Shown: positions 1,883 to 28,050 of the stretch, one piece after another
Layout: every line of letters starts with the position of its first letter
Position numbering within the stretch: the stretch's first letter is position 1
Virus record (IMG/VR): IMGVR_UViG_3300028840_008160
Span: 1-64,000 of that record
Reading direction: 5' to 3' (one strand)
Length of the DNA stretch: 64,000 bases
Notes under the pieces: model-generated
Told to the model about the DNA's origin: nothing
Seen by the model: only the letters and a program-made list of their open reading frames with translations
Databases searched by the model: none
Made by a program: the position numbers and the translations under genes

Positions 1883-2064
1883 TTTTGACAATAGCTTATG
1901 ATGTAGTACTTGGCATTGATACAAGAGTTTTTAAACTAGTTAAAAATGAGACTATTGAAGTCCTTGAAGAAGTAGATAAATATAGTAGAGTAAAAGTATT
2001 GATACAGCAACAAGAAGTTTTGATTAACAAGCAGATGTTAGACCGAATTGTTAATAGTCATTAA
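1879..2064 (+). CDS. Small hypothetical protein
   Basis: ATGA coupling to upstream ORF; 61 aa. Confidence 0.5.
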   Translation: MILTIAYDVVLGIDTRVFKLVKNETIEVLEEVDKYSRVKVLIQQQEVLINKQMLDRIVNSH

Positions 2065-2834
2065 ATTCTTTTTGAATATTCGCAATTTCTACAAATAACT
2101 GGTTCATCCTCTGATTTTACACGCCTTAAAAAGTCATTATATTCTATTGTGTTGAATAAGTCGTTGTAATAACGATCAAATATGTTGCCGATTTTGTGCT
2201 TAAGACTAAAGTCGCAACAACATATATAGACATCTCCATTTGGTAGGCATACGTTGTTTACGTATTTGAATGGTAGTTGATGAACTTTTTGACATGTTAT
2301 TGGGCCAGACTTATAATTGACATTGAAATTTAAATTGTTTGCTCGTGAAATAATTGGTAATTTTAGGACTGATAAATCATTAAAGTCATTAGTTGGCTGA
2401 CCGAGTGACACGAAAATAATTTTGGAGTTGTGTTTGCTGATTAATTCTATGTTTTGCAATATGACAGTTGAGTCAGTTATGAAATGATTGTTGTCTGGCA
2501 AATGCACACATATTGTAGCTTTTGACCATATAGATAAATCTATATCTTCTAGTTTTATCGATAATGTAGTATAAATCATACAAGGTCTATTGTCGCGAAT
2601 AGTTTTATCTATCATTTTAAAACTGTCTGGATTTTGTAATGGTTCACAAAAGCCAGCAAAGTCAATTTGCACATGTTTAGGTAAATTGTTTAGTATTTGA
2701 CAAAAGTTAGTAAATGATAAAGTTGGTTGTCCTTTGTACACTTTGATAAGATTGTTTTGTGGACAACAGCTGCAGTGGTTTATGCATGGGATTGCAGTTG
2801 TTATTTCAAAAGTAGGATAATTTGCAAATGTCAT
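2061..2834 (-). CDS. Radical SAM protein with SPASM/twitch domain
   Basis: CxxxCxxC (CINHCSCC), GFCEPL, C-terminal LPNGDVYICCCD...IGNI...CRNC. Confidence 0.8.
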   Translation of the reverse strand: MTFANYPTFEITTAIPCINHCSCCPQNNLIKVYKGQPTLSFTNFCQILNNLPKHVQIDFAGFCEPLQNPDSFKMIDKTIRDNRPCMIYTTLSIKLEDIDLSIWSKATICVHLPDNNHFITDSTVILQNIELISKHNSKIIFVSLGQPTNDFNDLSVLKLPIISRANNLNFNVNYKSGPITCQKVHQLPFKYVNNVCLPNGDVYICCCDFSLKHKIGNIFDRYYNDLFNTIEYNDFLRRVKSEDEPVICRNCEYSKRI

Positions 2835-5303: not shown

Positions 5304-5340
5304 AGGAGGAGTCAATGAAAATTGGCTCCTCCTTTTTCTT
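5304..5340 (+). terminator. Intrinsic terminator/attenuator-like hairpin upstream of the NAD cluster
   Basis: 13-bp stem aggaggagtcaat / attggctcctcct (one G-U), GAAA loop, followed by a T-run. Confidence 0.65.
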
Positions 5341-5365
5341 TGTTATTTGAAATGATTACAATGAT

Positions 5366-5587
5366 ATGGACACATCAGTTGGAAATCTACGAAAAATGTT
5401 AGAGAGTTTGCCAGATGAGGCAGACATTGTGACTGAAGATTGGGATGGTGCTGCTATTAGAAGAATGAATCATAGCACAAATGAGCCCTTAGCACTGGAA
5501 GAATTGCTTATGGTTCATGATGGTAGACTCTATATTGTCAATAAGCAAGCTACTGAAAACGAATGTCATCGATGGCAACGAGGTTGA
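5366..5587 (+). CDS. Small hypothetical protein
   Basis: 73-aa ORF directly upstream of pncB; VGNLRKMLESLPDEADI resembles common small phage proteins. Confidence 0.55.
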   Translation: MDTSVGNLRKMLESLPDEADIVTEDWDGAAIRRMNHSTNEPLALEELLMVHDGRLYIVNKQATENECHRWQRG

Positions 5588-5589
5588 CT

Positions 5590-6774
5590 ATGCAAGGACC
5601 AATAAGCGCAATCGACAATGATCAGTACAAGTTCTCAATGCAAAATGGTGTTGTGAAGTTGTTTCCTCGCGAAATTGTTCGATACGAGTTTTTTAATCGA
5701 GGCAAACATGAGTTTCCGGATGGATTTGCGAAACTTCTGCGTGAACTAGTAGATATGTATGCTGCTATTACATTTGTCAAAGATGACATCGATTTTTTTA
5801 GAGAAAAAGCTTACTATTTTGATCCTGCATATCATTCGTTTTTACGAGGCTACAGATATGATCCGTCAGAAGTGAAAATCATTCAAGAAGGTTACAATCT
5901 TCAAGTAATTGTGGAGGGCTTATGGCACAAAACAATTCTATGGGAAGTGCCGCTTATGGCATTGATCTGCGAATTGTATTATGAAATGACTAAACAACAA
6001 CCAAAAGACAGAAAAGAACGAGAGCAAATCAACAAAGAGAAAGTTATTGCTCTTACAAAATTGTTAATCAAAGCAGCAGAATTTGGAACAAGACGACGGT
6101 TTTCTTTTATTAATCAAAAAGAGTTTTTAATTGATGCTATAACTTATGGCAATTTTGCTGGACATAAACTTCTTTCTGGAACAAGCAATGTATATTTTGC
6201 ACGTGAACTTGATCTTCTATCAATAGGTACACAAGCTCATGAGTGGTACATGTTTCACGCTGCGAAGTATGGTTTTAGAATGGCTAACTTGCTCGGTATG
6301 GAAAACTGGGTTAAAGTATATAATGGAGATTTGGGAATAGTTCTTCCAGATACATTCACCACTGATGCTTTTCTCAAGTCTTTTAATACAATGTTTGCAA
6401 AGCTGTTCGACGGCAGTAGACAAGATAGTGATTGTCCGTTCGCATACACAGATAAATTTGTCAAACATTATCGTGATTTGAAAATTCCGTCACAACACAA
6501 AACAATTGTTTATTCTGACGGAATAAGCAGTGTTAAAACCGTGAGTGATATCAAGGAATATGCAACAGGAAAAGTGCAAGACGGATATGGTATTGGTACA
6601 TGGTTTACAAACGATGTTGGTCTTAAGCCGATGAATATCGTTATTAAGATGACAGCTGCATTTATAAACGGAGTATGGGTACCTACAATTAAGTTGTCTG
6701 ACGCAGCAACGAAGAATACAGGAGATCAGATTCAAATTGGAATTGCTAAACATGAATTAGGGATAAATGTATGA
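5590..6774 (+). CDS. pncB: Nicotinate phosphoribosyltransferase
   Basis: DNDQYKFSMQ, EFGTRRRFS, GTSN, GTQAHEW (phospho-His motif as in E. coli PncB), DTF, RQDS, GIGT, KLSD. Start placed at ATG 5590 after gagg; the track ORF starts at 5563. Confidence 0.92.
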   Translation: MQGPISAIDNDQYKFSMQNGVVKLFPREIVRYEFFNRGKHEFPDGFAKLLRELVDMYAAITFVKDDIDFFREKAYYFDPAYHSFLRGYRYDPSEVKIIQEGYNLQVIVEGLWHKTILWEVPLMALICELYYEMTKQQPKDRKEREQINKEKVIALTKLLIKAAEFGTRRRFSFINQKEFLIDAITYGNFAGHKLLSGTSNVYFARELDLLSIGTQAHEWYMFHAAKYGFRMANLLGMENWVKVYNGDLGIVLPDTFTTDAFLKSFNTMFAKLFDGSRQDSDCPFAYTDKFVKHYRDLKIPSQHKTIVYSDGISSVKTVSDIKEYATGKVQDGYGIGTWFTNDVGLKPMNIVIKMTAAFINGVWVPTIKLSDAATKNTGDQIQIGIAKHELGINV

Positions 6775-6887
6775 TAGCTTTCATCAGTTTAGTTTTTTTG
6801 TTGATATTATTGACAGACTTGTCAATTACGATAAAGAACATGTAAGAATTAGAATAATAATAGTGGAACAGAATAGGAAAAAAATGT

Positions 6888-7796
6888 ATGGACAACTTGG
6901 TGTATACGACAAAGATTAGTGATAGTGCTTATGCTTATGCAGTAAAGAAAATGCAAAACATTTTTCGTCAGTATTTAATTGATAACAATCGAAAAGCTGT
7001 TGTTATTGGAATGTCGGGTGGTATTGATAGTGCTCTAACTGCAGCTTTGGCTGGGCAAGTATGTGCAGAATTAGAAATACCGCTTGTTGGTAGAAGTCTA
7101 CCAATAATGACGAATAAACCTGATGAAGTAGAACGTGCCGCAAGAGCTGGTAAAATATTTTGTTCTAATTTTGGTGAAAAAGATTTAACTAGTGCATATA
7201 CTGCTTTACACGAATTGATGGATGACATTGATGCTAGCAGTGATGAGCAATTAACTTTGACAGTAAAGATTCGAGAAGGTAATATTAAAGCGCGAACAAG
7301 AATGATATATCTTTATGATCTTGCTAGAAAAAATGATGGATTGGTTTTGTCAACTGATAACTATACAGAATTAATGCTCGGTTTCTGGACACTTCATGGT
7401 GATGTAGGCGATTTTGGATTACTTCAGAATATTTGGAAAACAGAAGTATATGAAATGGCAAGATTTTTATGTCGCGCAGGATTAGATGATGATGCTATTC
7501 AAATACTAAAAGACACTATTACTGCTGTTCCGACAGATGGTTTAGGAATTACAAATAGTGATTTAGATCAGCTTGGAGCAGGCAGCTATGAAGAGGTTGA
7601 CAAAATTTTGATGACATATTTATCTGGTTCAAGAAAAGAATATATGAATCATCCAGTTATCATAAGACATTTGACATCTGTTTATAAGAGAGCGAATCCT
7701 GTTAATATAGCTAGAAAAGATATTCTTCCTTCTGTTTATAAGAGAGCGAATCCTGTTAATATAGCTAGAAAAGATATTCTTCCTTTAACAGCATGA
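6888..7796 (+). CDS. nadE: NH3-dependent NAD+ synthetase
   Basis: PP-loop SGGIDS, GNIKARTRM, TDNYTE, GFWTLHGDVGD, KTEV, PTDGL; no glutaminase domain. Confidence 0.92.
   Translation: MDNLVYTTKISDSAYAYAVKKMQNIFRQYLIDNNRKAVVIGMSGGIDSALTAALAGQVCAELEIPLVGRSLPIMTNKPDEVERAARAGKIFCSNFGEKDLTSAYTALHELMDDIDASSDEQLTLTVKIREGNIKARTRMIYLYDLARKNDGLVLSTDNYTELMLGFWTLHGDVGDFGLLQNIWKTEVYEMARFLCRAGLDDDAIQILKDTITAVPTDGLGITNSDLDQLGAGSYEEVDKILMTYLSGSRKEYMNHPVIIRHLTSVYKRANPVNIARKDILPSVYKRANPVNIARKDILPLTA
7677..7784 (+). repeat. Perfect 54-bp in-frame tandem duplication in the nadE 3' end
   Basis: tctgtttataagagagcgaatcctgttaatatagctagaaaagatattcttcct at 7677-7730 and 7731-7784 (SVYKRANPVNIARKDILP x2). Confidence 0.95.
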
Positions 7797-7802
7797 GATT
7801 TT

Positions 7803-8552
7803 ATGTGGATAAAGAATCAAGCAATCATCGTCGGAACTGATCACATTCATACTAAGACTAATCGTCAAGATTATGTATTAACTTATAGTGATAGAGATAT
7901 TACATGCGGCGTTGTGTGTGACGGTTGCAGTTCTGGACAATTTTCTGAATTTGGTGCATGTTTTATTGCAAATTTAGTAATAAAATTATTGAAAACTAAT
8001 CGAGAAGCAACTGCTGAATTGTTGACAGTTGAAATGATGATTGAAATAAAACGTGCTATAGACAGCGTTCTTTTTTTACTTCATGATTATTCAACAACAT
8101 TGCCTATAGATATAGCACATTTTATTGAACATCATTTTTTATCGACATTTGTTTTTTGCATGATAGCTGGTGATAGAATTATCATAGGTCGTTGCGGTGA
8201 TGGCTTGACGATTGTAAATGGTATAGCTGACATTGCTGATCAGAAGAATGCGCCGCATTATATTGCGTATAACAATGTGCCGAAATTTTTGTTATCAACG
8301 TCAGATTTGAATGGCATTGAAATACAGGTATTAAATGAAGTAGAGGTGAACAGCATTGTTATTGGTACAGATGGATTGGTGCCGCTTCTAGAAGCTAATG
8401 AAGGTCATGAATTGTTTGGAACTGAGAAGAGACAGTTACAACGGAAATTTAATGTATGGCAAAATAAAAGACAGTTATTTCATGATGATGTTTCATGCGT
8501 TGTTTTTGAAAAGGTGAAGAATGAAGATAGTATTATGCGGGCAAACGATTGA
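7803..8552 (+). CDS. PP2C-family protein phosphatase (TerY-P/YegK-like)
   Basis: G.DH...NRQD, VVCDGCSS, GDG, GTDGL and DDVS metal-binding motifs. Confidence 0.8.
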   Translation: MWIKNQAIIVGTDHIHTKTNRQDYVLTYSDRDITCGVVCDGCSSGQFSEFGACFIANLVIKLLKTNREATAELLTVEMMIEIKRAIDSVLFLLHDYSTTLPIDIAHFIEHHFLSTFVFCMIAGDRIIIGRCGDGLTIVNGIADIADQKNAPHYIAYNNVPKFLLSTSDLNGIEIQVLNEVEVNSIVIGTDGLVPLLEANEGHELFGTEKRQLQRKFNVWQNKRQLFHDDVSCVVFEKVKNEDSIMRAND

Positions 8553-10383
8553 TTTAGATCAGAGCAAATTACTTGGCAGTGGTGGTGAGGCTAATGTTAT
8601 TAGACATGGCAAATATGCAATAAAAGTGTATCATAAACCGACCGTTGACAGAATTCAGAAATTGACTGATTTTTTTAAGAAGGGATTTAATTTACCAAAT
8701 AATGTTTTCAGTCCTATCGAGCCTGTGACAAGCACTAAAGGTAAGATGATAGGTTTTGCCATGCAGGCAGCAACAAAAAAGTGTCCTGAGTTTATTCATC
8801 TTTACGATACTACGTTTCGTAGCACACAACGTATTAGTTCGGTGGATATTGTTAAGTTATTTATTCACACTAAACAAACGCTGGATGCTATACATCAACT
8901 TGGATTGGTAGTAGGTGATTTTAATGATTTAAATCAACTTTTTGACGATACATTTTCTTCTATCTTTATAGATGTAGATTCTTATCAGTTTGATAATTAT
9001 CCATGTATAGTCGGGACAGATTCATATATCGATCCAAATTTGTATGGATTTGATTTGACTAAGAAGCCGTCATTTTCAAAACAAACTGATTGGTACTCGT
9101 TTGCTGTTTTACTATTTAGAAGTTTATTGTTTGTGCATCCTTATGGAGGATTTTACAAAAAATATAAGACGCTATTTGCACGAGCTCAAAATAATGTATG
9201 GGTATTTGATAGTAATGTTATTAAGCCAAAAATAGGATTACATCCGGAAACATTGAGCGACGAGTTGTTGAGTTATTTTGATGCAATATTCACGAAAGGT
9301 CAACGATTAGATTTACCATTACATCTTTTGCAGCAGCAAACATTTAACGAATGTAAAGTTTGCGGCACGCAATTTAGTCATACACGAGGTAAATGCCCAC
9401 AATGTCAGAAAGTCGCCCCGTTTAAGACTGTTGATGTTAGTAGTATTTTAACACATAAAGTTATTGGCAATGAGAAGTGTGAGACTACAACTGTATTCGA
9501 AGTTAACGGCACAATTTTGTTTGTCAAAGTTGTTGCTGGTATAATAGTAATAGTATCGTATGATGACAGTTCAACAGTGCTTGATACAATTGATACGAGT
9601 GGCTATAAGCAACGTGTAGTGTTGTGGTCTGGGCACAGAAAAGATGTAAAGTTTGATTTTATGTTTCCATCATGTTTGGTTGTTGGGTATGATAAAACAT
9701 TAATATTACTACATATTGGTGATAGTGACGCTAAAGAAATTGTTAAAACAACAACAATGACATTTTTAGATGAACCTATTTTTGGATGTAGTGAAAGTCA
9801 TTTGTATCGTTTGACACCAACGATGATAATGTCATCGCAATTACACCGTTCAGGTCAGTTAATAGAAAAAGGATTAGTATCAGCTGTAGCAAATCAAACG
9901 CAGTTTTTTGTGGGACAAAATCAATTTGGTTTGGGATTCTATAGAGTTTTCAGTGATTATAAATTCTTTACGGTGTCTGACATACAAGGTAGACATGAGG
10001 TAGAATTAGATCAATTAAATGGACAGATGATTGATATTGATGTCAAAGTATCTGTTAATAGTTTGATTTTATTGCGAAAGAGTTTGAATAAAGGTCGGAC
10101 ATATTCACATTGGCATATGATAAATGATAAAGGTCAGGTTGTTGAATCTAAGTCAGAAGAGTCAATTAATTCAGAATTGCTTAGAAACATTCATGGAAAG
10201 GAGCTCGCAGGGTCTAATATCATTCATTCTACAGATGCAGGTATTGCCGTTGAGAAGCATGGTAATGTATCGTTGAAGGTATCAACAGCAGAGATTGTTA
10301 ATACAGGTCATAGATTAATGTTATACAAACACGGACTGTTAGCAGTTTCTGAAAAGAAAATCGTGTATCTTGTTTTGAAGTAG
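8521..10383 (+). CDS. Ser/Thr protein kinase (YegI/TerY-P-like) with Zn ribbon and beta-rich C-terminal region
   Basis: LGSGGEA glycine loop, AIKVY, VGDFNDLN catalytic loop, IDVDS, TDWYSFAV, HPY; CKVC...CPQC. Confidence 0.82.
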   Translation: MKIVLCGQTIDLDQSKLLGSGGEANVIRHGKYAIKVYHKPTVDRIQKLTDFFKKGFNLPNNVFSPIEPVTSTKGKMIGFAMQAATKKCPEFIHLYDTTFRSTQRISSVDIVKLFIHTKQTLDAIHQLGLVVGDFNDLNQLFDDTFSSIFIDVDSYQFDNYPCIVGTDSYIDPNLYGFDLTKKPSFSKQTDWYSFAVLLFRSLLFVHPYGGFYKKYKTLFARAQNNVWVFDSNVIKPKIGLHPETLSDELLSYFDAIFTKGQRLDLPLHLLQQQTFNECKVCGTQFSHTRGKCPQCQKVAPFKTVDVSSILTHKVIGNEKCETTTVFEVNGTILFVKVVAGIIVIVSYDDSSTVLDTIDTSGYKQRVVLWSGHRKDVKFDFMFPSCLVVGYDKTLILLHIGDSDAKEIVKTTTMTFLDEPIFGCSESHLYRLTPTMIMSSQLHRSGQLIEKGLVSAVANQTQFFVGQNQFGLGFYRVFSDYKFFTVSDIQGRHEVELDQLNGQMIDIDVKVSVNSLILLRKSLNKGRTYSHWHMINDKGQVVESKSEESINSELLRNIHGKELAGSNIIHSTDAGIAVEKHGNVSLKVSTAEIVNTGHRLMLYKHGLLAVSEKKIVYLVLK

Positions 10384-10393
10384 GAGGATTTTT

Positions 10394-10678
10394 GTGGCTA
10401 AGAAATTGTATGTTGGTAATCTCCCTTGGAGTGCTACTGACGAAAGTCTGCGCGATTTTTGCGCACAGTTTGGTGAAGTTGTATCGGCTCAGGTAATCAC
10501 GGATCGAGAGTCTGGTCGGTCACGTGGTTTTGGTTTCGTCGAAATGACAAATGCTGATGAAGCAATGTCTTTACTTAATGGTAAAGATTTTGACGGCAGA
10601 CAGCTCAAGGTGAATGAAGCCCGTGAGCGGCAGAAACCACAAAGAAGCGGTGGTGAATATAACAGAAACAGATATTAA
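10394..10678 (+). CDS. RRM (RNP-1) RNA-binding protein
   Basis: RNP2 KLYVGNL, RNP1 RGFGFVEM, LNGKDFDGRQLKVNEA; RBS aggagg. Confidence 0.93.
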   Translation: MAKKLYVGNLPWSATDESLRDFCAQFGEVVSAQVITDRESGRSRGFGFVEMTNADEAMSLLNGKDFDGRQLKVNEARERQKPQRSGGEYNRNRY

Positions 10679-10730
10679 GCCTAGTTAGCTATACTGAGTT
10701 ATCTTTTAACTTATCTTATGGAGGTGTAGC

Positions 10731-11693
10731 ATGAATAAACCTACGTTTTATGATCCGGCTAAAATAGGTACATTGTACCTTCCACGGCTAGCAGACATAG
10801 AGGCAGAAGCTGCGAAAGTAAGTATTCCGGCTTCTGCCTCTGATCGTCCCGGTGCTAAAGTTGCACTGATGCTTATCGATTTTCAAATTGATTTTTGCCA
10901 TAAGACAGGGTCGTTGTATGTCAATGGTGCAGAAAAAGACATAGAGAATGCTGTCAACTTCATTTTAGCAAATCTTGAGCGGCTTACGAACATTTTTGCG
11001 TCTTTGGATTCACACCTTCTTTTCCAGATTTTCTATCGTACATGGTGGCAATTACAGAACGGCGAGAAGCCTGATTTGTTTACAGAAATTTACAAAGAAG
11101 GTGGTTCTGGCCCAATGGCGAAGAATATTGACAGCGGTGATGTTCGACCGTTGCTTGACCCTGTTAACAGTATCAGCTATACTGAAAAGTTGATGCTTCA
11201 GGCAAATAAGCCTCTTTGCATTTGGCCATATCATACAATGCTTGGTACTCCGGGACAGGCGATGGATCCTGCATTGTACGAAGTTTTGGCTTATCATGCG
11301 TTTGTCAGGAAGACACAGTTGAATTTCTTACAGAAGGGACAAATACCTCAAACTGAAATGTATGGTATTCTCAGCCCTGAGGTAAAGATGCCGAATCATC
11401 CACAAGGCGGATTCAACACTGATTTTCTTAACATTCTGATGAAGCATGATAAAGTTATTATTGCCGGCGAGGCAAAGAGTCATTGTGTGTTGGCTTCTAT
11501 CATGCAGATTCATGAGTTTTTCAGCAAAACAGACCCTGATGTTTTGAAGAAAGTATTCATTTTGGAAGATTGTATGAGTTCTGTGCCTCATCCAGCGATT
11601 GATTTTGAAGCTATTGCTGTTGCTGAATTTGACAAATTCAGAAATTCTGGCATTAACATCGTCAAAAGTACCGATTTGGATCTTACAGCATAA
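10731..11693 (+). CDS. pncA: Nicotinamidase-like cysteine hydrolase (isochorismatase fold)
   Basis: LIDFQIDFC (catalytic Asp), LDSH and WPYH metal ligands, KG, AGEAKSHCV (catalytic Cys); clustered with pncB and nadE. Confidence 0.78.
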   Translation: MNKPTFYDPAKIGTLYLPRLADIEAEAAKVSIPASASDRPGAKVALMLIDFQIDFCHKTGSLYVNGAEKDIENAVNFILANLERLTNIFASLDSHLLFQIFYRTWWQLQNGEKPDLFTEIYKEGGSGPMAKNIDSGDVRPLLDPVNSISYTEKLMLQANKPLCIWPYHTMLGTPGQAMDPALYEVLAYHAFVRKTQLNFLQKGQIPQTEMYGILSPEVKMPNHPQGGFNTDFLNILMKHDKVIIAGEAKSHCVLASIMQIHEFFSKTDPDVLKKVFILEDCMSSVPHPAIDFEAIAVAEFDKFRNSGINIVKSTDLDLTA

Positions 11694-11722
11694 GATTCAG
11701 ACTTCATATTAAAGGAGGTAAC

Positions 11723-12505
11723 ATGTCATCAAATCCGATTGGCATTACAGATATTAAAAGTCTTGTATCTAATGCCGTAAGTGAGAATGAGGTTAGCGAT
11801 GCTGCAGGTCAGATAATGATAAGCAGCTTGAACGACACAAATATTCTTGGTTGTACCGGTGTTGATGTCGACGATCTTACTGTCGACAATGTGACATTGG
11901 TATCAATCGCGCTAGACGCGTCATATTCAATGTACGAACATGAACAGACTGTTCGTGAAGCATATGATGAATTGGTCATCAAAGCTATGAAAGAATCAAA
12001 GCAGGCGAATTCAATGCTTGTCAGCACTCGAGTCTTTGACGAAACTGATCGAATTCTTTATGGATTCAAGAAAGTCGAGGATGTTGGCAAAGTTGGTAGT
12101 CAATATACAGCACAAGGCGGAGCTACGCTACTTCATGATACAGCTATTGCAGCCATGACTGGCATTCGTGCTTATGCCAAGAACTTGAATGATAGTGGCG
12201 TACAGACAAAATGTATTGTTGTTGTCATGTCAGATGGAGGCAATAATACAGGGACTTTGAGTCCTGATCCTGTCAAGAAACTTGCTGAAGACTGTATCAA
12301 GTCAGAAATGTTCTATTTGGTGTATGTTGGATTTAAACAACACTCATCAGATAATCTTGAGGCAATCGGCAAGTCAATGGGATTTCCCAATGTATTGACT
12401 GCTGCTAAATCTCCTAGCGAAATGAGAAAAGCTATGGGTCTTGTTAGTCAATCAATTATTCGTGCTAGTCAAACACAGGTCGGGCCAAGTAATTCTTTCT
12501 TTTGA
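11723..12505 (+). CDS. vWA domain protein (TerY-like)
   Basis: MIDAS DASYS (DxSxS), GATLLHD, VVVMSDG. Confidence 0.8.
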   Translation: MSSNPIGITDIKSLVSNAVSENEVSDAAGQIMISSLNDTNILGCTGVDVDDLTVDNVTLVSIALDASYSMYEHEQTVREAYDELVIKAMKESKQANSMLVSTRVFDETDRILYGFKKVEDVGKVGSQYTAQGGATLLHDTAIAAMTGIRAYAKNLNDSGVQTKCIVVVMSDGGNNTGTLSPDPVKKLAEDCIKSEMFYLVYVGFKQHSSDNLEAIGKSMGFPNVLTAAKSPSEMRKAMGLVSQSIIRASQTQVGPSNSFF

Positions 12506-12530
12506 GTTTACTAATACAATAACATAAAAT

Positions 12531-12556
12531 GGTCGGTTAAAACCGGCCTTTTCTTT
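12531..12556 (+). terminator. Intrinsic terminator ending the pncB-to-vWA cluster
   Basis: ggtcggt-taaa-accggcc stem-loop followed by a T-run. Confidence 0.6.
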
Positions 12557-12602
12557 GTAGTGTCATTGATTTATTTAATGATTATATTTAAGGAGGTGAT
12601 GA

Positions 12603-13106
12603 ATGATTAAATATCTTAAAGGTGATGCCACAGCACCGGTGTTAGATAAAGCATTGATAGCACACGTTTGTAATAATTGGGGAGGTTGGGGGGCTGGATT
12701 TGTATTAGCTATCTCAAAACGATGGTCTGAACCAGAAAAAGCATATCGTGACTGGTATAAAGGTATAGTAGACAATATCGCACAAGAACGTGACAAGGAT
12801 AAATTTGCATTAGGTAATGTGCAATTTGTGCTGGTGTTTGATAAAGGTATTTGGGTAGCTAACATGATTGCGCAAGACGGTTTCAAGAAAGCTGGCGATC
12901 CAAAAGACAAAGTTTATTTAGATTATGATGCGCTTAACATGACTCTTTGTGAAGTTTGCAAATTTGCAAGAAAGAAAGGTCTGACATTACATATGCCTAG
13001 AATAGGTTGCGGTCTTGCAGGAGGGCGATGGGATTTGATTGAACCATTACTTGAGACTCATTCTGATGATAACAAAGTTGATGTATACGTGTATGATTTT
13101 GAATGA
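12603..13106 (+). CDS. Macrodomain ADP-ribosylhydrolase (Poa1p/SCO6735-like)
   Basis: KGDAT, IAHVCNNWGGWGAGF, WVANMIAQ, HMPRIGCGLAGGRW. Confidence 0.85.
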   Translation: MIKYLKGDATAPVLDKALIAHVCNNWGGWGAGFVLAISKRWSEPEKAYRDWYKGIVDNIAQERDKDKFALGNVQFVLVFDKGIWVANMIAQDGFKKAGDPKDKVYLDYDALNMTLCEVCKFARKKGLTLHMPRIGCGLAGGRWDLIEPLLETHSDDNKVDVYVYDFE

Positions 13107-13489
13107 AACAAATTATTTTATATCCATGGCATAGTACAACTAGAGCTGAGTTTATACAAGCTCTTAAATCTAATCCAGAGCAAGCAACACTTGTTAAAGG
13201 AAACGACATTGTTAAGAGTAAAATGCGGTTTAATGTTGAGCCGAATAGAAATGATTGCAGTTCTTTGCATGAATTTAAAGACTATGAAATAACTATAAAA
13301 TGCTCTGATGGTGATGCAACTATTGTTTTAGATGATGGCAAGTTTGTATTTATTGAAGATTCAAATGTTCAAGAATTAAGTAAATATGAATTTATTTTAA
13401 ATGAAATACAAGAAGAAGAAAAGACAGAGCCGACAAGACAGCAAAGACAGCAAATGGCAAAACCTAGAAAGCCTTTTAAATTTAGGTAA
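13103..13489 (+). CDS. Hypothetical protein
   Basis: ATGA-coupled to the macrodomain gene. Confidence 0.55.
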   Translation: MKQIILYPWHSTTRAEFIQALKSNPEQATLVKGNDIVKSKMRFNVEPNRNDCSSLHEFKDYEITIKCSDGDATIVLDDGKFVFIEDSNVQELSKYEFILNEIQEEEKTEPTRQQRQQMAKPRKPFKFR

Positions 13490-13492
13490 GAT

Positions 13493-14176
13493 ATGAAACA
13501 GTTATTTAAAGCTGATTTTGTTCGTGATTCTTTTTTCACATATACAACCGGCATGCGTGATAAAAATGCTGTTCAACAAATTATGCTGGCGTATAGATTA
13601 GCTAAATATGCTCAAATGAATAAGTTTGGTGGTGATAATATTGATAGACCGAAAATTGCTGTGAAGATATTTTTGTTTTTGGTAAAACAATTTAGAAGGT
13701 CTTATACAAACATTAAGCTTGAAATTGATGTGACAGCTATATTGTTAAGTTATGTCATTCGCAATTCATACATGCTAACACAAGATGATGTTATAAAGAT
13801 ATTTGGACAAAACGTTGATAAAAAAGTTGCAGAATTAATTGGCTTTGATCGAATTGTAGATTCAAGAGCAAAAATTACAATTGCTAAACAATCTAAGTTT
13901 AAAGATGAGATTTCAAAGCAGACGATGATTATGCGTGCAGCTATAACAATGGCAGAATTAAGAACATTAACGTTAACTAAAGCAAGAGCATTTCCTGCAA
14001 AAGTATATGAACGCTATTTGCCGGTTTTTAACGCTTATCCAGATGTTTGTCATGTAGTAGCTAATGAGTTAAAAATATGGTTGGTTAAAAAATTGAAAGA
14101 AGCACAATCAAGCACAGATTATAATTTAACATCAGGAAATATGTTTTCATATTTTACTATTTTGCAAGATTTATAA
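13493..14176 (+). CDS. Degenerate RelA/SpoT-type HD (alarmone hydrolase-like) domain protein
   Basis: LAYRLAKYAQ, TAILLSYVIRNS...IFGQNV (cf. AALLHDVIEDT...FG.EV), IMRAAITMAELRTL (cf. IKLADRLHNMRTL), ERYLPVF; catalytic HD, ED and D residues are missing. Confidence 0.55.
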   Translation: MKQLFKADFVRDSFFTYTTGMRDKNAVQQIMLAYRLAKYAQMNKFGGDNIDRPKIAVKIFLFLVKQFRRSYTNIKLEIDVTAILLSYVIRNSYMLTQDDVIKIFGQNVDKKVAELIGFDRIVDSRAKITIAKQSKFKDEISKQTMIMRAAITMAELRTLTLTKARAFPAKVYERYLPVFNAYPDVCHVVANELKIWLVKKLKEAQSSTDYNLTSGNMFSYFTILQDL

Positions 14177-15060: not shown

Positions 15061-15999
15061 ATGACTAGGATTTTGCAAATTGATGGTGGCGGTGTAAGAG
15101 GAATAATTCCTGCGATTATTTGCGCAGAAATAGAACAAAATGTCGGTCGTCCAATTAATGAAATTTTTGATTTAATCACTGGCACATCTACAGGAGCTGT
15201 AATAGGAGGTTCATTGGCATTTGGCATTGCTGCTACTACAGTTAGAGATTTGTATTTAACGGCTGTGCCAGAGCTATTTAAACGAAGACCGTTGTGGAAT
15301 CCTAAGAATTGGTTTAGAGAGAAGTATGACAGAACAGAGTTTCAAGAACAACTACGAAAATATCTTGGTAATCAAAAAATGTCTCAAGCAAAAACAAAAT
15401 ATATGGCGACAGCTTTTAATTTAAGTTCACAACGTACTCATTTTATTAAATCGTGGGACGACAAAGATAATAGATGGAATATAGTTGATGTCATTTCCTG
15501 GTCTGCTTTATCTGCTGCGTTTTATTTTGGAAAGATCAACGTGCCGAATTATAATTGGACACTTACTAATGCAATGAGTGCCACAGAACAAAAGATAGGA
15601 GCTACATTTCAAGACGGTGGACAGGGCATAAGTAATTGTACATTAGGATTTGATTTAGATGAATGTTTAGCAAATGATTGGCATGACGTGTTTATTTTAT
15701 CTATAGGCACAGGCCAACGTAGTATGTATATTCCTTATAAAAAGACAGCAAAAACCGGTTATATTGCACAAGTTATAGATTATATTTTTCAAGCTAGAAA
15801 TGAAGCGACGCCGACGCAATTTTTAACAGCAAAATATGTTGCCAACAAAAGAGAAGATTATATATTGAGTCGATTAGATGCGAACATTTCAAAGAAACAG
15901 GAACCACTTGATTCTATTAAATATGTTGATGAATACGAAAAAATAGGCAATGAATTAGCAAAGAAGGTGCCATATCAATATTTAAAGTCAATAGTGTAA
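15061..15999 (+). CDS. Patatin-like phospholipase
   Basis: DGGGVRG oxyanion loop, GTSTG nucleophile elbow, SALSAA, DGG, LSIGTG. Confidence 0.88.
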   Translation: MTRILQIDGGGVRGIIPAIICAEIEQNVGRPINEIFDLITGTSTGAVIGGSLAFGIAATTVRDLYLTAVPELFKRRPLWNPKNWFREKYDRTEFQEQLRKYLGNQKMSQAKTKYMATAFNLSSQRTHFIKSWDDKDNRWNIVDVISWSALSAAFYFGKINVPNYNWTLTNAMSATEQKIGATFQDGGQGISNCTLGFDLDECLANDWHDVFILSIGTGQRSMYIPYKKTAKTGYIAQVIDYIFQARNEATPTQFLTAKYVANKREDYILSRLDANISKKQEPLDSIKYVDEYEKIGNELAKKVPYQYLKSIV

Positions 16000-17162: not shown

Positions 17163-18356
17163 GTGATGATAACGTCTAGAAATATATTAGGATTTTCTGT
17201 TGCCCCTAACATGTGTAGAGTAATGGAGGCAAATGGATTTTATGCATCAATAATGAAGTCAGAAAAACGAAAAGATGATGATGGCGGATTGCCGTCCGGA
17301 ATGCCTATACCTGTTATGCCAGTTGATTTTTTGAAAGATAGACCAGATTTTTGGGTTGGCGGCATTGGTTCATTTTGCTGCCCTGTTGAGTCTGACTGGG
17401 GTCTGTGGTTTAATTGGACGATGAATATATCTAATATAGCTGTATTGTCGTCAGTAAAAGGAATGAATCCAATTACTGGTCAACGTGTTAATGGGTTAGA
17501 ATTGGAACAATATAAAGAACAATGCCCTATTCATAAAGTGAAATTTCAGCATGGTAAATTTTGTCCTAAATGTAATTTCAAATGGCCAGATCAAAATTAC
17601 ATTACAGAGCCAAATCTATTATATTGGGACGGGTTTAGAACAGCCGATGGTCAAGTTAGACAATTTTATTTTACAGAAGATCTTGCAAAATCTGTCCCTG
17701 AATTGGTCATTGGTAAAGATGATACAGTACCAGCATTTGGGTTTTGTTTTTATATGCCGAAGAAAGTAGAGTCTATAAATTATGAAGGTGGTAAGCGATT
17801 AAAGAATAAATTTCTAGAAATAGAAAAAATGACTGTTTCTTCTGGAAGTAGTTTGAGCATGGGTATGGTGAGAGGAATGTCAATACCTGGCGTTTATACT
17901 AAAATGGTCGATGATACTTATAAACATTCATCAAGTGTATATTATGCATCTTTAGCACCAATTTGTATGGATATGTGTAATAATTCTTATGTCGGATCAA
18001 CTGTAGCTGATGGGGCATCTACAAAGTTTTCGCTCACTTCATCTGCTGATATCAATGCGTTTAATGTAAGTGATGTTAAATTGAGTTTAGAGACGAGTGA
18101 ACTAGCAGATGAGTTAATACTTAGAGAAAGAAGTGAAAATGCTGAAGTTGGAATTGGAGCAGGTGCGAAACTTAAACAATCGCTTATGCAAGATGTAAGA
18201 ACTGTTGATTCATGGCAAAATAAACCTGCAGGAGTGATTAGAGTATATTTTGTTTTTAGAGAGCAATTTGAACGATATGTTAGTGCTGGATTGAATAATT
18301 TAGCTGGTCATAAAGAAGGTTATTTAAGTGATCTTCCTGTAGGAGGTAACAAATGA
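17163..18356 (+). CDS. Conserved-looking hypothetical protein with Zn ribbon
   Basis: CPIH...FCPKC; QNY...WDGF...GQVRQF and EVGIGAGAKLKQ...D...W motifs. Confidence 0.6.
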   Translation: MMITSRNILGFSVAPNMCRVMEANGFYASIMKSEKRKDDDGGLPSGMPIPVMPVDFLKDRPDFWVGGIGSFCCPVESDWGLWFNWTMNISNIAVLSSVKGMNPITGQRVNGLELEQYKEQCPIHKVKFQHGKFCPKCNFKWPDQNYITEPNLLYWDGFRTADGQVRQFYFTEDLAKSVPELVIGKDDTVPAFGFCFYMPKKVESINYEGGKRLKNKFLEIEKMTVSSGSSLSMGMVRGMSIPGVYTKMVDDTYKHSSSVYYASLAPICMDMCNNSYVGSTVADGASTKFSLTSSADINAFNVSDVKLSLETSELADELILRERSENAEVGIGAGAKLKQSLMQDVRTVDSWQNKPAGVIRVYFVFREQFERYVSAGLNNLAGHKEGYLSDLPVGGNK

Positions 18357-19084
18357 ATACAGTTGACTTGTTGTTTATAGTTGATGTTACTGGGTCAATG
18401 AGTGGATTTATAAGTGATGCAAAACAAAAAATGAAGTTTGTATTATCTTCACTAAAGAAACAATTTGAAATCGATTTGAAAGTTGGATTGAGTTTATATC
18501 GTGATCATCTATCGCAAGACACATCATTCGTTACAGCAGTTTTTGATTTAGCATCAATTGACGAGGTTAAAGATAAAATCGATAAAATAACTGTTGGTGG
18601 CGGTGGTGATCATCCTGAGGCTGTGATTGATGGAATTATTGATGGCATTACTGATATGAAATGGCGCGAAGATAGTAGAAGGATAGCATTTTTGATTGGT
18701 GATGCACCGGCTCACGGTATGATTTATGGTGAAAGTTGCTGTCAATGTGGTCAAACGTGGGGCAAAGCAGTGGCTTGCGCAGAGAAACATAAAGTGACAA
18801 TTTATTCTATACTGTTAAGCGGCGATGAGCAAGCAAGATTAAATTTCAAACTTATTTCTAATTTTACTGGAGGGTTATTAATTGAGAGTGATAATGCAAT
18901 GGATGTAATAGTTAATACACTTACTACTGAGTTTGGTAATGTTAATTTAGATTCAAAGATTTTAGAAATGATGGCAAATAAATTTAGCAATGAAGATATT
19001 TGTAAGATGTTAAATGTTGATAGAGATGAATTGGCTGACTCAAAGTCTAGAATAGCACAATATGCTAGCACTGTGTTAATATAA
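18353..19084 (+). CDS. vWA domain protein
   Basis: DLLFIVDVTGSM, YRDH, GGGDHPEAV, W-R, IGDAPAH; ATGA-coupled to the upstream gene. Confidence 0.85.
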   Translation: MNTVDLLFIVDVTGSMSGFISDAKQKMKFVLSSLKKQFEIDLKVGLSLYRDHLSQDTSFVTAVFDLASIDEVKDKIDKITVGGGGDHPEAVIDGIIDGITDMKWREDSRRIAFLIGDAPAHGMIYGESCCQCGQTWGKAVACAEKHKVTIYSILLSGDEQARLNFKLISNFTGGLLIESDNAMDVIVNTLTTEFGNVNLDSKILEMMANKFSNEDICKMLNVDRDELADSKSRIAQYASTVLI

Positions 19085-27498: not shown

Positions 27499-28050
27499 AT
27501 GTTCCTGATTATAGAAGGAATTCATGATACAGGAAAGTCTACATTGATTGACAGGTTGTGCTCTAGTAAATTTGCCTTTGCGTTGTTTAAGGCTAAGCGA
27601 TTGATACCACAGTTTGAAGATGCAAAAAATGTTCAAGTATCTGATTTTGCTTTTGGTGTAAATTGTTCAGTTGTATGGTTTGCTAGTCAATTGTCAGAAA
27701 GACATCAAATAGTATTTGATAGATTGCATTTATCTGAATACGCTTATGGTCGAGCAATTCGCAATACTGATAAATTTGATGCAATACGTCGATTTGAAAT
27801 AATTGATCAAACATTGTCGACATTTAATGTTAAGTTAGTTTATTTAGAATGCGATTATGAAATAATACAACAACGACAGAAGAAGAAAAATGTTGTTTAT
27901 AGCAAAATTAGTTACGAAAAACTGACAGAAGCTTTTAATAATGCATTAAAAGTAACTAGATTACCTATATTGAGATTAAACACTGGTGAAAAAAATGAAA
28001 CATTAATATATCAAGAAGTATGCCGATTTTTGGAGGACAAATGCGATTGA
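27499..28050 (+). CDS. dNMP/thymidylate kinase-like P-loop kinase
   Basis: IIEGIHDTGKSTL Walker A and FDRLHLSEYAYG. Confidence 0.75.
   Translation: MFLIIEGIHDTGKSTLIDRLCSSKFAFALFKAKRLIPQFEDAKNVQVSDFAFGVNCSVVWFASQLSERHQIVFDRLHLSEYAYGRAIRNTDKFDAIRRFEIIDQTLSTFNVKLVYLECDYEIIQQRQKKKNVVYSKISYEKLTEAFNNALKVTRLPILRLNTGEKNETLIYQEVCRFLEDKCD

What the first reader, a model, noticed from the sequence alone, without database searches (positions are those of the whole stretch)
5590..11693. Phage-encoded deamidating NAD+ reconstitution route (PncA, PncB, NadE), distinct from NARP1/NARP2
Seen: nicotinamidase-like, nicotinate PRTase (GTQAHEW, PncB-type rather than Nampt-type) and NH3-dependent NAD synthetase genes in one co-oriented cluster of a phage genome. 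Established: Thoeris, SIR2/DSR and TIR defences cleave NAD+ to nicotinamide plus ADP-ribose. The described phage counter-pathways are NARP1 (ADPR-PP synthetase + nicotinamide ADPR-transferase) and NARP2 (Nampt + NMNAT), and both keep the amide. Inference: this set rebuilds NAD+ via nicotinate, NaMN and NaAD, whose intermediates may escape NADases, making it a candidate third anti-defence route. The NaMN adenylyltransferase step (NadD/NadM/NadR) is absent from this window and must come from elsewhere in the genome or from the host. The nearby Nudix could recycle the ADP-ribose half.
Basis: partly seen in the sequence, partly recalled or inferred. Interest (0 to 1): 0.85.

Follow-up and report, generated by a model that had tools for sequence, protein, structure and literature searches.

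The report
Phage NAD salvage operon with kinase switch
A 330-kb jumbo phage carries nicotinamidase, nicotinate phosphoribosyltransferase and NAD synthetase genes in one block; such phage gene sets are already published, but here the nicotinamidase sits in a conserved kinase, phosphatase and vWA cassette that I did not find described.

Summary
PncB (5563-6774) and a single-domain NadE (6888-7796) pass curated NCBIfam cut-offs. The 320-aa cysteine hydrolase (10731-11693) keeps the nicotinamidase catalytic triad and metal site, and its model matches solved nicotinamidases best. No NaMN adenylyltransferase is in the 64-kb window.

Preiss-Handler gene sets in jumbo phages were published in 2024. 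A role against NAD+ depletion was suggested for a cultured phage in 2026. The name NARP3 now belongs to PnuC-NadR. In IMG/VR at least 528 viral contigs encode a PncB relative. Of 65 non-redundant loci, 47 have NadE and 31 have NadE plus an amidase within 10 kb. Only 9 have an adenylyltransferase candidate.

The PP2C phosphatase, the Hanks-type kinase with a Zn ribbon, this long-form PncA and the vWA protein form a four-gene cassette. It recurs, in permuted order, in distant jumbo phages, interleaved with PncB and NadE. It also recurs in at least six bacterial lineages, in four loci beside the NAD regulator NrtR.

An anti-defence role is plausible but untested.

The parts
5304..5333 (+). 13-bp-stem hairpin followed by TTTTCTTTGT, 30 nt upstream of the first + strand ORF of the block. 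Its role is unknown; it lies in a divergent intergenic region.
   Evidence: the tail motif occurs after only two hairpins in the window
5366..5587 (+). 73-aa ORF of unknown function, the first ORF of the + strand block; it overlaps the PncB start by 25 nt
   Evidence: no Pfam or NCBIfam hit
5563..6774 (+). PncB, nicotinate phosphoribosyltransferase (403 aa)
   Evidence: TIGR01514 342.8 bits, above the cut-off of 269.55. Pfam NAPRTase and NAPRTase_N. PDB hits are only NAPRTases. T223, H226 and E227 of GTQAHEW are invariant in 12 phage PncB sequences.
6888..7796 (+). NadE, single-domain (NH3-type) NAD synthetase (302 aa). Its 3' end carries a perfect 54-bp tandem duplication (7677-7785), which is an 18-aa repeat.
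   Evidence: TIGR00552 125.1 bits, above the cut-off of 63.65. PDB hits are NAD synthetases. Tandem repeat at 100% identity.
7803..8552 (+). PP2C-type Ser/Thr phosphatase (249 aa), cassette member 1
   Evidence: Pfam PP2C_2 E 3.2e-19; syntenic homologues in phage and bacterial loci
8521..10383 (+). Hanks-type protein kinase domain (about 1-272), a Cys4 zinc ribbon (C278, C281, C292, C295) and an all-beta C-terminal domain (311-620); cassette member 2
   Evidence: D133, N138, D151, D153 and the four Cys are invariant, and K35 is nearly invariant. AF2 pLDDT 88.7. Foldseek top hits are eukaryotic-type protein kinases, E about 1e-7. Sequence-family hits are only weak.
10394..10678 (+). RRM-type RNA-binding protein (94 aa), inserted between kinase and PncA in this phage only
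   Evidence: Pfam RRM_1 E 1.8e-20. NF058537 98.8 bits, just under the cut-off of 100. Absent at this position in L001, L003, L007 and L096.
10731..11693 (+). Long-form nicotinamidase (PncA-like cysteine hydrolase, 320 aa), cassette member 3
   Evidence: D50/K202/C252 and D93/H95/H168 are kept in all full-length members of a 105-sequence family alignment; one row has a gap at D50. AF2 pLDDT 90.7. The 13 best Foldseek PDB matches are all nicotinamidases, for example 2wta E 2e-9. NrtR and PRTase neighbours in bacteria.
11723..12505 (+). vWA-domain protein with a DxSxS motif (LDASYS) read by eye as MIDAS (260 aa), cassette member 4. In most loci examined it lies just downstream of the PncA-like gene.
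   Evidence: Pfam VWA 23.8 bits, at the cut-off; sequence; synteny
12531..12548 (+). Terminator-like GC-rich hairpin with T tail, closing the PncB-to-vWA unit
12603..13106 (+). Macrodomain protein (167 aa) of the BT1257/SCO6735 type (ADP-ribose binding or hydrolysis), directly downstream. It is syntenic in the closest relatives.
   Evidence: PDB 2fg1 and 2afc at 7e-40 and 5e3b at 1.4e-38; phrog_335; homologues follow the vWA gene in L001 and L096
3310..3852 (-). Weak Nudix-like protein (180 aa) on the opposite strand; possibly an ADP-ribose pyrophosphatase
   Evidence: Pfam NUDIX 18.4 bits, below the cut-off of 21.1. The nearest solved proteins are ADPR pyrophosphatases, E 1e-4. A 65%-identical homologue lies near the cluster in L001.

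Best explanation
The + strand block from 5366 to 12505 is an NAD+ recycling unit of a jumbo phage. The long-form nicotinamidase would hydrolyse nicotinamide, the pyridine product of NAD+ cleavage, to nicotinate and NH3. PncB would convert nicotinate, PRPP and ATP to NaMN. A NaMN adenylyltransferase, from the host or from the unseen 266 kb of the genome, would make NaAD. The NH3-type NadE would amidate NaAD to NAD+. The nicotinamidase does not travel alone. It is one member of a four-gene cassette: PP2C phosphatase, Hanks-type kinase with a Zn ribbon and a beta domain, PncA-like enzyme, and vWA protein. The cassette resembles a TerY-P phosphorylation triad. I infer that this triad is a phospho-switch that gates the nicotinamidase step or the salvage flux. 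The net effect would be to hold up the NAD+ pool in the infected cell. That would serve phage NAD+ consumers and would also blunt NAD+-depleting defences. Shown here: gene identities, catalytic residues, the fold, and recurrent co-location across unrelated phages and bacteria. Inferred: substrates, co-transcription, what the triad phosphorylates, and any effect on defence systems.
For: Enzyme identities. Nicotinamidase assignment rests on several results. The triad and metal ligands are kept in all full-length members of a 105-sequence alignment. The model has pLDDT 90.7. Its 13 best PDB matches are nicotinamidases. Stand-alone bacterial members sit next to NrtR in 6 loci and near a 356-aa protein with a QRPTase_N hit in 18 loci. 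One unit: gaps between the genes from the 73-aa ORF to vWA are 113 nt or less, two of them overlaps, and hairpins bound the unit at 5304-5333 and 12531-12548. Recurrence of the pathway: at least 528 IMG/VR contigs encode a PncB relative. Of 65 non-redundant loci, 47 have NadE and 31 have NadE plus an amidase within 10 kb, in several different arrangements. Cassette coupling: both gene orders occur, PP2C-Kin-PncA-vWA and PncA-vWA-PP2C-Kin, and 7 of 7 tested middle ORFs are PP2C_2. All 10 viral loci found with the kinase family carry a PncA-like gene and a vWA gene within about 3 kb. The cassette is also in 14 of 80 bacterial loci from at least six lineages. Link of the cassette to NAD metabolism: L123 has PncB-PncA-vWA-PP2C-Kin-NadE contiguous, and in L193 the genes are interleaved. 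NrtR lies directly upstream of the cassette in L012, L024 and L071, and also in L066, which has NadE and PncB too. Predicted activity of the triad: the kinase catalytic residues and the Cys4 ribbon are invariant or nearly so. The PP2C and DxSxS (MIDAS-like) motifs, read by eye, are present. Relevance to infection: jumbo phage PA5oct upregulates the host pncA-pncB1-nadE operon (PMC7318152). NARP1 and NARP2 show that rebuilding NAD+ defeats NADase defences (10.1101/2024.02.11.579819).
Against: No biochemical or phenotypic data exist for any of these proteins. The NaMN adenylyltransferase step is missing from the window and from most related loci (9 of 65), so the route is incomplete without the host. 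By my own knowledge of yeast Pnc1 and Sir2, removing nicotinamide relieves product inhibition of sirtuin-type enzymes; the abstract start of PMC5734772 notes this product inhibition. That could help a SIR2-type NADase rather than the phage. The route costs more ATP than NARP2, which is also from my own knowledge. The cassette lies among housekeeping genes in bacteria. That fits homeostasis as well as conflict. Nothing shows that the triad acts on PncA. Co-location among related phages is partly inherited, although the permuted orders and the bacterial loci argue against pure ancestry. Sigma-70-like promoter matches are at background level (56 found, 45 expected from shuffles), so co-transcription is unproven.
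Confidence: 0.6

Rival explanations
1. This is an ordinary auxiliary metabolic cluster. The phage boosts the host's own Preiss-Handler flux to supply NAD+ for replication and for phage NAD+-consuming enzymes. It has no specific effect on NADase defences.
For: NAD-jumbo phages were described as carrying both NAD+ synthesis genes and many NAD+-consuming enzymes (PMC11662467). The same cassette sits among housekeeping genes, and in some loci next to NrtR, in bacteria. A macrodomain downstream points to ADP-ribosylation traffic. No PADLOC model is matched at E <= 0.001 by the five proteins of the unit that were scanned.
Against: NARP2 uses equally ordinary salvage enzymes and does protect (10.1101/2024.02.11.579819). 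The substrate of the first enzyme is exactly the NADase product. The two readings are not exclusive.
Confidence: 0.25
2. PP2C, kinase, the hydrolase and vWA form a separate TerY-P-like conflict system, for example superinfection exclusion. In it the cysteine hydrolase acts on some other amide, and the adjacency to PncB and NadE is incidental.
For: TerY-P is described as vWA plus PP2C plus a kinase with a Zn ribbon. Related modules are stand-alone defence systems (PMC10542128, citing Anantharaman 2012 and Gao 2020). This cassette has that architecture. A patatin gene that strongly matches CBASS effector models lies 2.5 kb away.
Against: The cassette proteins match no PADLOC model at E <= 0.001. 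The nicotinamidase-specific metal site is conserved throughout the family, and nicotinamidases are the best structural matches. NrtR lies directly upstream in four loci, and the cassette is interleaved with PncB and NadE in several permutations. Neighbours in bacteria are housekeeping genes, not defence genes.
Confidence: 0.1
3. NadE works as an NMN synthetase, amidating NaMN to NMN, as I recall for Francisella NadE. In that case the missing step would be an NMN adenylyltransferase rather than NadD.
For: NadD is absent in the window and in most related loci, whereas NadR-like genes (CTP_transf_like plus AAA_28) occur near PncB in some phages. The solved relatives all lie at similar distance, so they do not separate the two specificities.
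Against: No specificity determinant was tested. NadD-like genes lie next to NadE in four non-redundant relatives: L141, L149, L178 and L184. An adenylyltransferase is still required.
Confidence: 0.05

Closest known systems
Preiss-Handler and nicotinamide-deamidating salvage of bacteria (pncA, pncB, nadD, nadE), e.g. the Pseudomonas aeruginosa pncA-pncB1-nadE operon
   Same: The same three enzyme families and the same predicted chemistry. The link to NrtR is seen in the bacterial relatives found here. The host operon is upregulated by a jumbo phage (PMC7318152).
   Different: It is encoded by a phage. No NadD is in the visible 64 kb. The nicotinamidase is a 320-aa long form with a roughly 70-residue insert and an N-terminal extension. 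It is accompanied by a kinase, PP2C and vWA triad.
'NAD-jumbo phages' (PMC11662467) and Xanthomonas phage X1 (PMC13384950)
   Same: Jumbo phages that encode pncB, nadE and sometimes pncA in clusters. A counter-defence role has already been suggested.
   Different: Those reports list pncB-nadD-nadE as the complete pathway. Neither describes the triad or the long-form nicotinamidase. Here NadD is not seen.
NARP1, NARP2 and NARP3 phage NAD+ reconstitution pathways
   Same: The proposed purpose is the same: rebuild NAD+ in the infected cell from what NADases leave behind.
   Different: NARP1 uses ADPR-PP synthetase plus Namat. NARP2 uses Nampt plus NMNAT. NARP3 uses PnuC plus NadR (PMC13464706). 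All keep the amide. This route removes it and adds it back, needs a host step, and has not been tested against any defence.
TerY-P phosphorylation triad (vWA/TerY, PP2C, Ser/Thr kinase with Zn ribbon)
   Same: The same three domain types in one operon, with the kinase followed by a Cys4 zinc ribbon.
   Different: The kinase has an extra C-terminal domain of about 310 aa, all beta. A nicotinamidase is a fixed fourth member. The cassette is linked to NrtR, PncB and NadE rather than to ter genes, restriction or CoCoNuT systems. PADLOC models give no hit at E <= 0.001.

Membership tests
Nicotinamidase (PncA/Pnc1) | Catalytic triad Asp-Lys-Cys of the isochorismatase-like fold | tested here: met
   D50, K202 and C252 are invariant in A2 and kept in all full-length members of the 105-sequence alignment; one row has a gap at D50. 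They align with the DFC and HCV motifs of M. tuberculosis PncA.
Nicotinamidase (PncA/Pnc1) | Asp-His-His metal site that binds the pyridine nitrogen | tested here: met
   D93, H95 and H168 are kept in 105 of 105 sequences. DSH aligns with DFH, and WPYH with WPPH, of 3pl1.
Nicotinamidase (PncA/Pnc1) | Fold closest to solved nicotinamidases | tested here: met
   The 13 best Foldseek PDB hits are nicotinamidases (2wta, 3v8e, 3r2j, 3pl1, 1ilw, 9u8m, 3o91), with TM-score by target mostly 0.69-0.77. They rank ahead of biuret hydrolase and other isochorismatase-like enzymes.
Nicotinamidase (PncA/Pnc1) | Passes curated family HMM thresholds | tested here: not met
   Pfam Isochorismatase 23.3 bits, below 27. 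NCBIfam PRK11609 26.2 bits, below 174. The roughly 70-residue insert and the N-terminal extension split the match.
Nicotinamidase (PncA/Pnc1) | Hydrolyses nicotinamide to nicotinate | not testable with these tools
   An enzyme assay is needed.
Nicotinate phosphoribosyltransferase (PncB), as opposed to Nampt | Equivalog HMM above its cut-off, and relatives that are NAPRTases | tested here: met
   TIGR01514 342.8 bits against 269.55. All six PDB matches are NAPRTases.
NH3-dependent NAD synthetase (NadE) | NAD_synthase domain with PP-loop and no glutaminase domain | tested here: met
   TIGR00552 125.1 bits against 63.65. The SGGIDS motif is present. The protein is 302 aa with no CN_hydrolase hit. 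NaAD versus NaMN preference was not tested.
Complete Preiss-Handler pathway | NaMN adenylyltransferase (NadD, NadM or NadR) present | tested here: not met
   The window has no HxGH motif, no tblastn hit and no profile hit, and none is among the Pfam families listed for the window. The remaining 266 kb of the contig was not seen. A NadD-alignment scan of IMG/VR did not return this contig among the best 80 of 128 (weak negative).
NARP2 | Nampt plus NMNAT | tested here: not met
   The PRTase is PncB-type, and no adenylyltransferase is in the window.
NARP1 | PRPS-like ADPR-PP synthetase plus Namat | tested here: inconclusive
   No PRPP-synthetase-like family appears in the Pfam results for the window ORFs. 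One search listed only 25 of 31 families, and no Namat model was available.
NARP3 | PnuC transporter plus NadR | tested here: not met
   NadR-like queries from related phages give no hit in the window. No PnuC family is among the Pfam families listed for the window (one search listed 25 of 31).
TerY-P triad | vWA protein plus PP2C phosphatase plus Ser/Thr kinase fused to a zinc ribbon, in one operon | tested here: met
   PP2C_2 E 3.2e-19 and VWA at its cut-off, with a DxSxS motif read by eye as MIDAS. Protein-kinase fold with conserved catalytic residues and a Cys4 ribbon.
TerY-P triad | Sequence membership in defence-system models | tested here: not met
   No PADLOC model is matched at E <= 0.001 by PP2C, kinase, vWA or PncA-like; the only matches are PDC-M21C at 0.0016 and PD-T4-6 at 0.0087. 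I could not verify which TerY-P models that library holds.

The most novel reading that the evidence does not exclude
The long-form nicotinamidase with its PP2C, Hanks-kinase and vWA partners is a previously undescribed, phosphorylation-gated NAD-salvage switch. Bacteria place it next to the ADP-ribose-sensing regulator NrtR. Jumbo phages have captured it, wired it to PncB and NadE, and use it to sense and reverse NAD+ cleavage during infection. That would make it a regulated, deamidating counter-defence route.
Probability: 0.3. Interest if true: 0.75.

Novelty: new variant of a known kind. Interest (0 to 1): 0.55.

Why it matters
NAD+ depletion is a common effector mechanism of bacterial immunity, and three phage routes that rebuild NAD+ are known. 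A deamidating route would be a fourth. It would show that phages can depend on a host enzyme (NadD) to complete the pathway. The trio is common among the PncB-bearing viral contigs sampled (31 of 65 non-redundant loci), so a positive test would apply to many phages. Separately, the fixed association of a nicotinamidase with a kinase, phosphatase and vWA triad, in both phages and bacteria and in some loci beside NrtR, suggests post-translational control of NAD salvage. I found no description of this. It also gives the poorly understood TerY-P type of triad a concrete candidate enzyme partner to test.

Tried and rejected
1. Megablast of the cluster against INPHARED phages gave no match.
2. I considered the PRTase being Nampt and rejected it.
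3. I considered the 320-aa protein being a generic isochorismatase or biuret-hydrolase-like enzyme. This is less likely, because the Asp-His-His site is conserved and nicotinamidases rank first.
4. PADLOC membership of the triad: no hit at E <= 0.001.
5. I looked for NadD, NadM and NadR in the window by motif, tblastn and a profile built from phage NadD-like proteins, and found nothing. Trying to reach the rest of the contig with a NadD-alignment scan of IMG/VR did not return it. That result is inconclusive, because only the best 80 of 128 were shown and the patterns were narrow.
6. The tail motif shared by the two bounding hairpins is not a general motif of this genome.
7. The original TerY-P paper (Anantharaman 2012) could not be read. 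Its description is taken second-hand from PMC10542128.
8. Literature searches linking TerY-P, vWA or NrtR with nicotinamidase found nothing relevant.
9. All genes of the unit are intact ORFs.

Full report
WHAT IS THERE

The window is the first 64 kb of a 329,800-bp IMG/VR contig, IMGVR_UViG_3300028840_008160. Window and contig coordinates coincide. It is a phage: large terminase, portal, prohead protease and capsid are present, along with gyrase and topoisomerase genes. G+C content is about 34%. No close relative exists in INPHARED.

From 5366 to 14176 all genes are on the + strand, mostly with short gaps or overlaps. In order they are:
- a 73-aa ORF of unknown function
- PncB, 5563-6774
- NadE, 6888-7796
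- a PP2C phosphatase, 7803-8552
- a 620-aa kinase, 8521-10383
- an RRM protein, 10394-10678
- the PncA-like protein, 10731-11693
- a vWA protein, 11723-12505
- a macrodomain protein, 12603-13106
- two ORFs of unknown function

Two strong hairpins, each followed by TTTTCTTTGT, sit at 5304-5333 and 12531-12548. They bracket the stretch from the 73-aa ORF to vWA.

THE THREE ENZYMES

PncB is secure. It scores 342.8 bits on the NCBIfam NAPRTase equivalog TIGR01514, against a cut-off of 269.55. Both Pfam NAPRTase domains match. Every solved relative is a nicotinate PRTase, the best being 2im5 at E 2e-80, and none is a Nampt.

NadE is secure as well. TIGR00552 gives 125.1 bits against a cut-off of 63.65. 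It has a PP-loop (SGGIDS) and a single domain, so it is the NH3-dependent type.

The PncA-like protein fails the family thresholds, but four independent lines support it:
- Conserved residues. In a family alignment D50, K202 and C252 (the catalytic triad) and D93, H95 and H168 (the metal site that marks nicotinamidases) are invariant. They are kept in all full-length members of a 105-sequence alignment, 25 of them viral.
- Model quality. The AlphaFold model has a mean pLDDT of 90.7.
- Fold. The 13 best PDB matches are nicotinamidases from Acinetobacter, yeast, Leishmania, M. tuberculosis, Pyrococcus, Drosophila and Streptococcus. They rank ahead of other isochorismatase-like hydrolases.
- Genomic neighbours. 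In bacteria the stand-alone form lies next to the NAD regulator NrtR in six loci. It lies near a 356-aa protein with a QRPTase_N hit (a possible phosphoribosyltransferase) in 18 loci.

The family is a long form of 264 to 354 residues. It has a conserved insert of about 63-73 residues between the DxH motif and the third metal ligand. It is found in at least 597 genomes of the GTDB set, mostly Chloroflexota.

THE MISSING STEP

No NaMN or NMN adenylyltransferase is in the window. There is no HxGH motif in six frames, no tblastn hit to phage NadD-like or NadR-like proteins better than E 0.17, and no profile hit. I could not read the remaining 266 kb. A scan of IMG/VR with a NadD-like alignment did not return this contig, but only the best 80 of 128 were shown.

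HOW COMMON THE TRIO IS

An alignment of phage PncB proteins finds at least 528 IMG/VR contigs. I examined the best 80, which collapse to 65 non-redundant loci. Within 10 kb of PncB:

| Feature within 10 kb | Loci (of 65) |
|---|---|
| NadE | 47 |
| An amidase (11 long-form only, the rest with a canonical isochorismatase-type match) | 37 |
| NadE plus an amidase | 31 |
| HxGH adenylyltransferase candidate | 9 |
| Kinase with vWA or PP2C (triad) | 8 |

Pfam shows the adenylyltransferase candidates to be either NadD-like (178-216 aa) or NadR-like (about 340 aa, CTP_transf_like plus AAA_28). The arrangements differ between loci: NadE-PncB-PncA in L089, PncB-NadE in L091 and L092, and NadE-amidase-...-PncB in many others. 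The pairing is therefore selected for, not just inherited. Leaving the adenylyltransferase out of the neighbourhood is the rule.

The PP2C, kinase and vWA genes belong with the PncA-like gene.

Evidence from viral contigs:
- The closest relatives (L001/L002, L003/L098, L096, L097) have PP2C-kinase-PncA-vWA in the same order.
- A distant viral clade, with PncA only 30-35% identical, has the permuted order PncA-vWA-PP2C-kinase. All seven middle ORFs that I tested are PP2C_2.
- Of 27 other viral loci with a PncA-like gene, 19 have the kinase within 10 kb.
- In the reverse direction, all 10 viral loci found with the kinase family have a PncA-like gene and a vWA gene within about 3 kb.

Evidence from bacteria:
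- The cassette is in 14 of 80 bacterial loci. They come from Polyangiaceae, Chloroflexota, a deltaproteobacterium, Pseudomonadales, three CPR lineages, Lachnospiraceae and Prevotella.
- It is also in a 'Spirochaetales' MAG contig.
- On a tree of the PncA-like family, cassette association changes state at least 10 times.

The cassette is tied to NAD metabolism:
- NrtR lies directly upstream of PP2C in L012, L024 and L071. It is also present in L066, which carries NadE and PncB too.
- In L123 the order is PncB-PncA-vWA-PP2C-kinase-NadE without a break. In L193 the salvage and triad genes are interleaved.
- Neighbours of the cassette in bacteria are housekeeping genes, not defence or phage genes.

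THE TRIAD PROTEINS

The kinase model (pLDDT 88.7) has three parts: an N-terminal domain that matches eukaryotic-type protein kinases, a Cys4 zinc ribbon, and an all-beta C-terminal domain of about 310 residues. The catalytic Asp and Asn (D133, N138), the metal-binding Asp residues (D151, D153) and the four Cys are invariant. The ATP-binding Lys (K35) is nearly invariant. By eye, the PP2C keeps its DG and GTDG metal motifs, and the vWA keeps a DxSxS motif that I read as MIDAS.

This is the architecture described for the TerY-P triad: vWA, PP2C, and a Ser/Thr kinase with a Zn ribbon (PMC10542128). However, the cassette proteins match no PADLOC model at E <= 0.001. I found no paper that links such a triad to a nicotinamidase.

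COMPARISON WITH WHAT IS KNOWN

- NARP1 and NARP2 are described in 10.1101/2024.02.11.579819. That paper does not mention nicotinate, PncA, PncB or NadE.
- NARP3 is PnuC plus NadR (PMC13464706).
- Jumbo phages with complete salvage or Preiss-Handler pathways, including a pncB-nadD-nadE cluster and phage pncA, were reported in PMC11662467.
- Xanthomonas phage X1 carries pncB, nadM, nadD, nadE and NAMPT. Its authors suggest that these may counter NAD+ depletion (PMC13384950).
- Jumbo phage PA5oct upregulates the host pncA-pncB1-nadE operon (PMC7318152).

The deamidating set in a phage is therefore a new member of a known kind, and the counter-defence idea has been voiced but not tested. The fixed kinase, PP2C and vWA partnership of a long-form nicotinamidase, and its link to NrtR, are what I could not find described.

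MECHANISM AND CONFIDENCE

Most likely (0.6): the unit recycles nicotinamide to NAD+ through nicotinate, NaMN and NaAD. The host, or an unseen phage gene, supplies the adenylyltransferase. The triad acts as a phospho-switch on the nicotinamidase step. One point from stoichiometry, which is inference only: the NH3 released by PncA is the co-substrate of the NH3-type NadE.

Whether this counters NADase defences is open. Two points count against it, both from my own knowledge. Removing nicotinamide relieves product inhibition of sirtuin-type enzymes. The route also costs more ATP than NARP2.

Rivals are a purely metabolic role (0.25), a separate TerY-P-like conflict system (0.1), and NadE acting as an NMN synthetase (0.05).

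VERDICT

- Observation: confirmed.
- Interpretation: partly supported, and largely anticipated in the literature.
- Added value: the cassette.
- Interest: 0.55.

Noticed in passing
window 7677-7785: A perfect 54-bp tandem duplication (2.0 copies, 100% identity) at the 3' end of NadE repeats 18 residues (PSVYKRANPVNIARKDIL) in frame. It is either a recent duplication or an assembly artefact.
   Followed up: partly
window 15061-15999 (+): A patatin-like phospholipase (312 aa) strongly matches PADLOC 'Effector' phospholipase models, which I take to be CBASS CapV-like effectors (E 7e-42), and Pfam Patatin (E 5e-17). A defence-type effector encoded by a phage.
   Followed up: no
window 12603-13106 (+): A macrodomain protein of the BT1257/SCO6735 type (PDB E about 1e-39), with a weak DarG match. 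It lies directly after the vWA gene and is syntenic in L001 and L096. It may reverse ADP-ribosylation.
   Followed up: partly
window 10394-10678 (+): An RRM-type RNA-binding protein (94 aa, NF058537 98.8 bits against a cut-off of 100) is inserted between kinase and PncA in this phage only. Local G+C is higher (0.396 in 10001-12000). This may be a recent acquisition from the host.
   Followed up: no
window 32771-36613 (+): The GyrA/topoisomerase II subunit gene (1280 aa) is interrupted by an intein with an HNH endonuclease. Topoisomerase matches are at residues 36-99 and 517-1178, and HNH at 205-306. Pfam Intein_splicing and HNH_3 are among the families hit by the window's ORFs.
   Followed up: no
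window 18353-19084 (+): A second vWA protein (VWA_4, E 1e-9) lies 6 kb downstream. A homologous gene is at the same relative position in L001.
   Followed up: no
window 2061-2834 (-) and 28020-29147 (+): Two proteins with SPASM domains. The second also has a radical SAM domain.
   Followed up: no
L005 3503-4573 and 17 other bacterial loci: A conserved 356-aa protein with only a QRPTase_N hit (27 bits, at its cut-off) lies within a few kb of the stand-alone long-form nicotinamidase in 18 mostly Chloroflexota loci. It may be an unrecognised pyridine phosphoribosyltransferase.
   Followed up: partly
L183 12280-16763: A viral locus where PP2C and the kinase flank a 333-aa CTP_transf_like protein and an NrtR-like gene next to PncB, with no PncA-like gene detected. 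The triad may associate with NAD genes more generally.
   Followed up: no
window 5304-5343 and 12531-12558: The two hairpins that bound the unit share the same tail, TTTTCTTTGT. The first lies in a divergent intergenic region, where a terminator is unexpected.
   Followed up: partly
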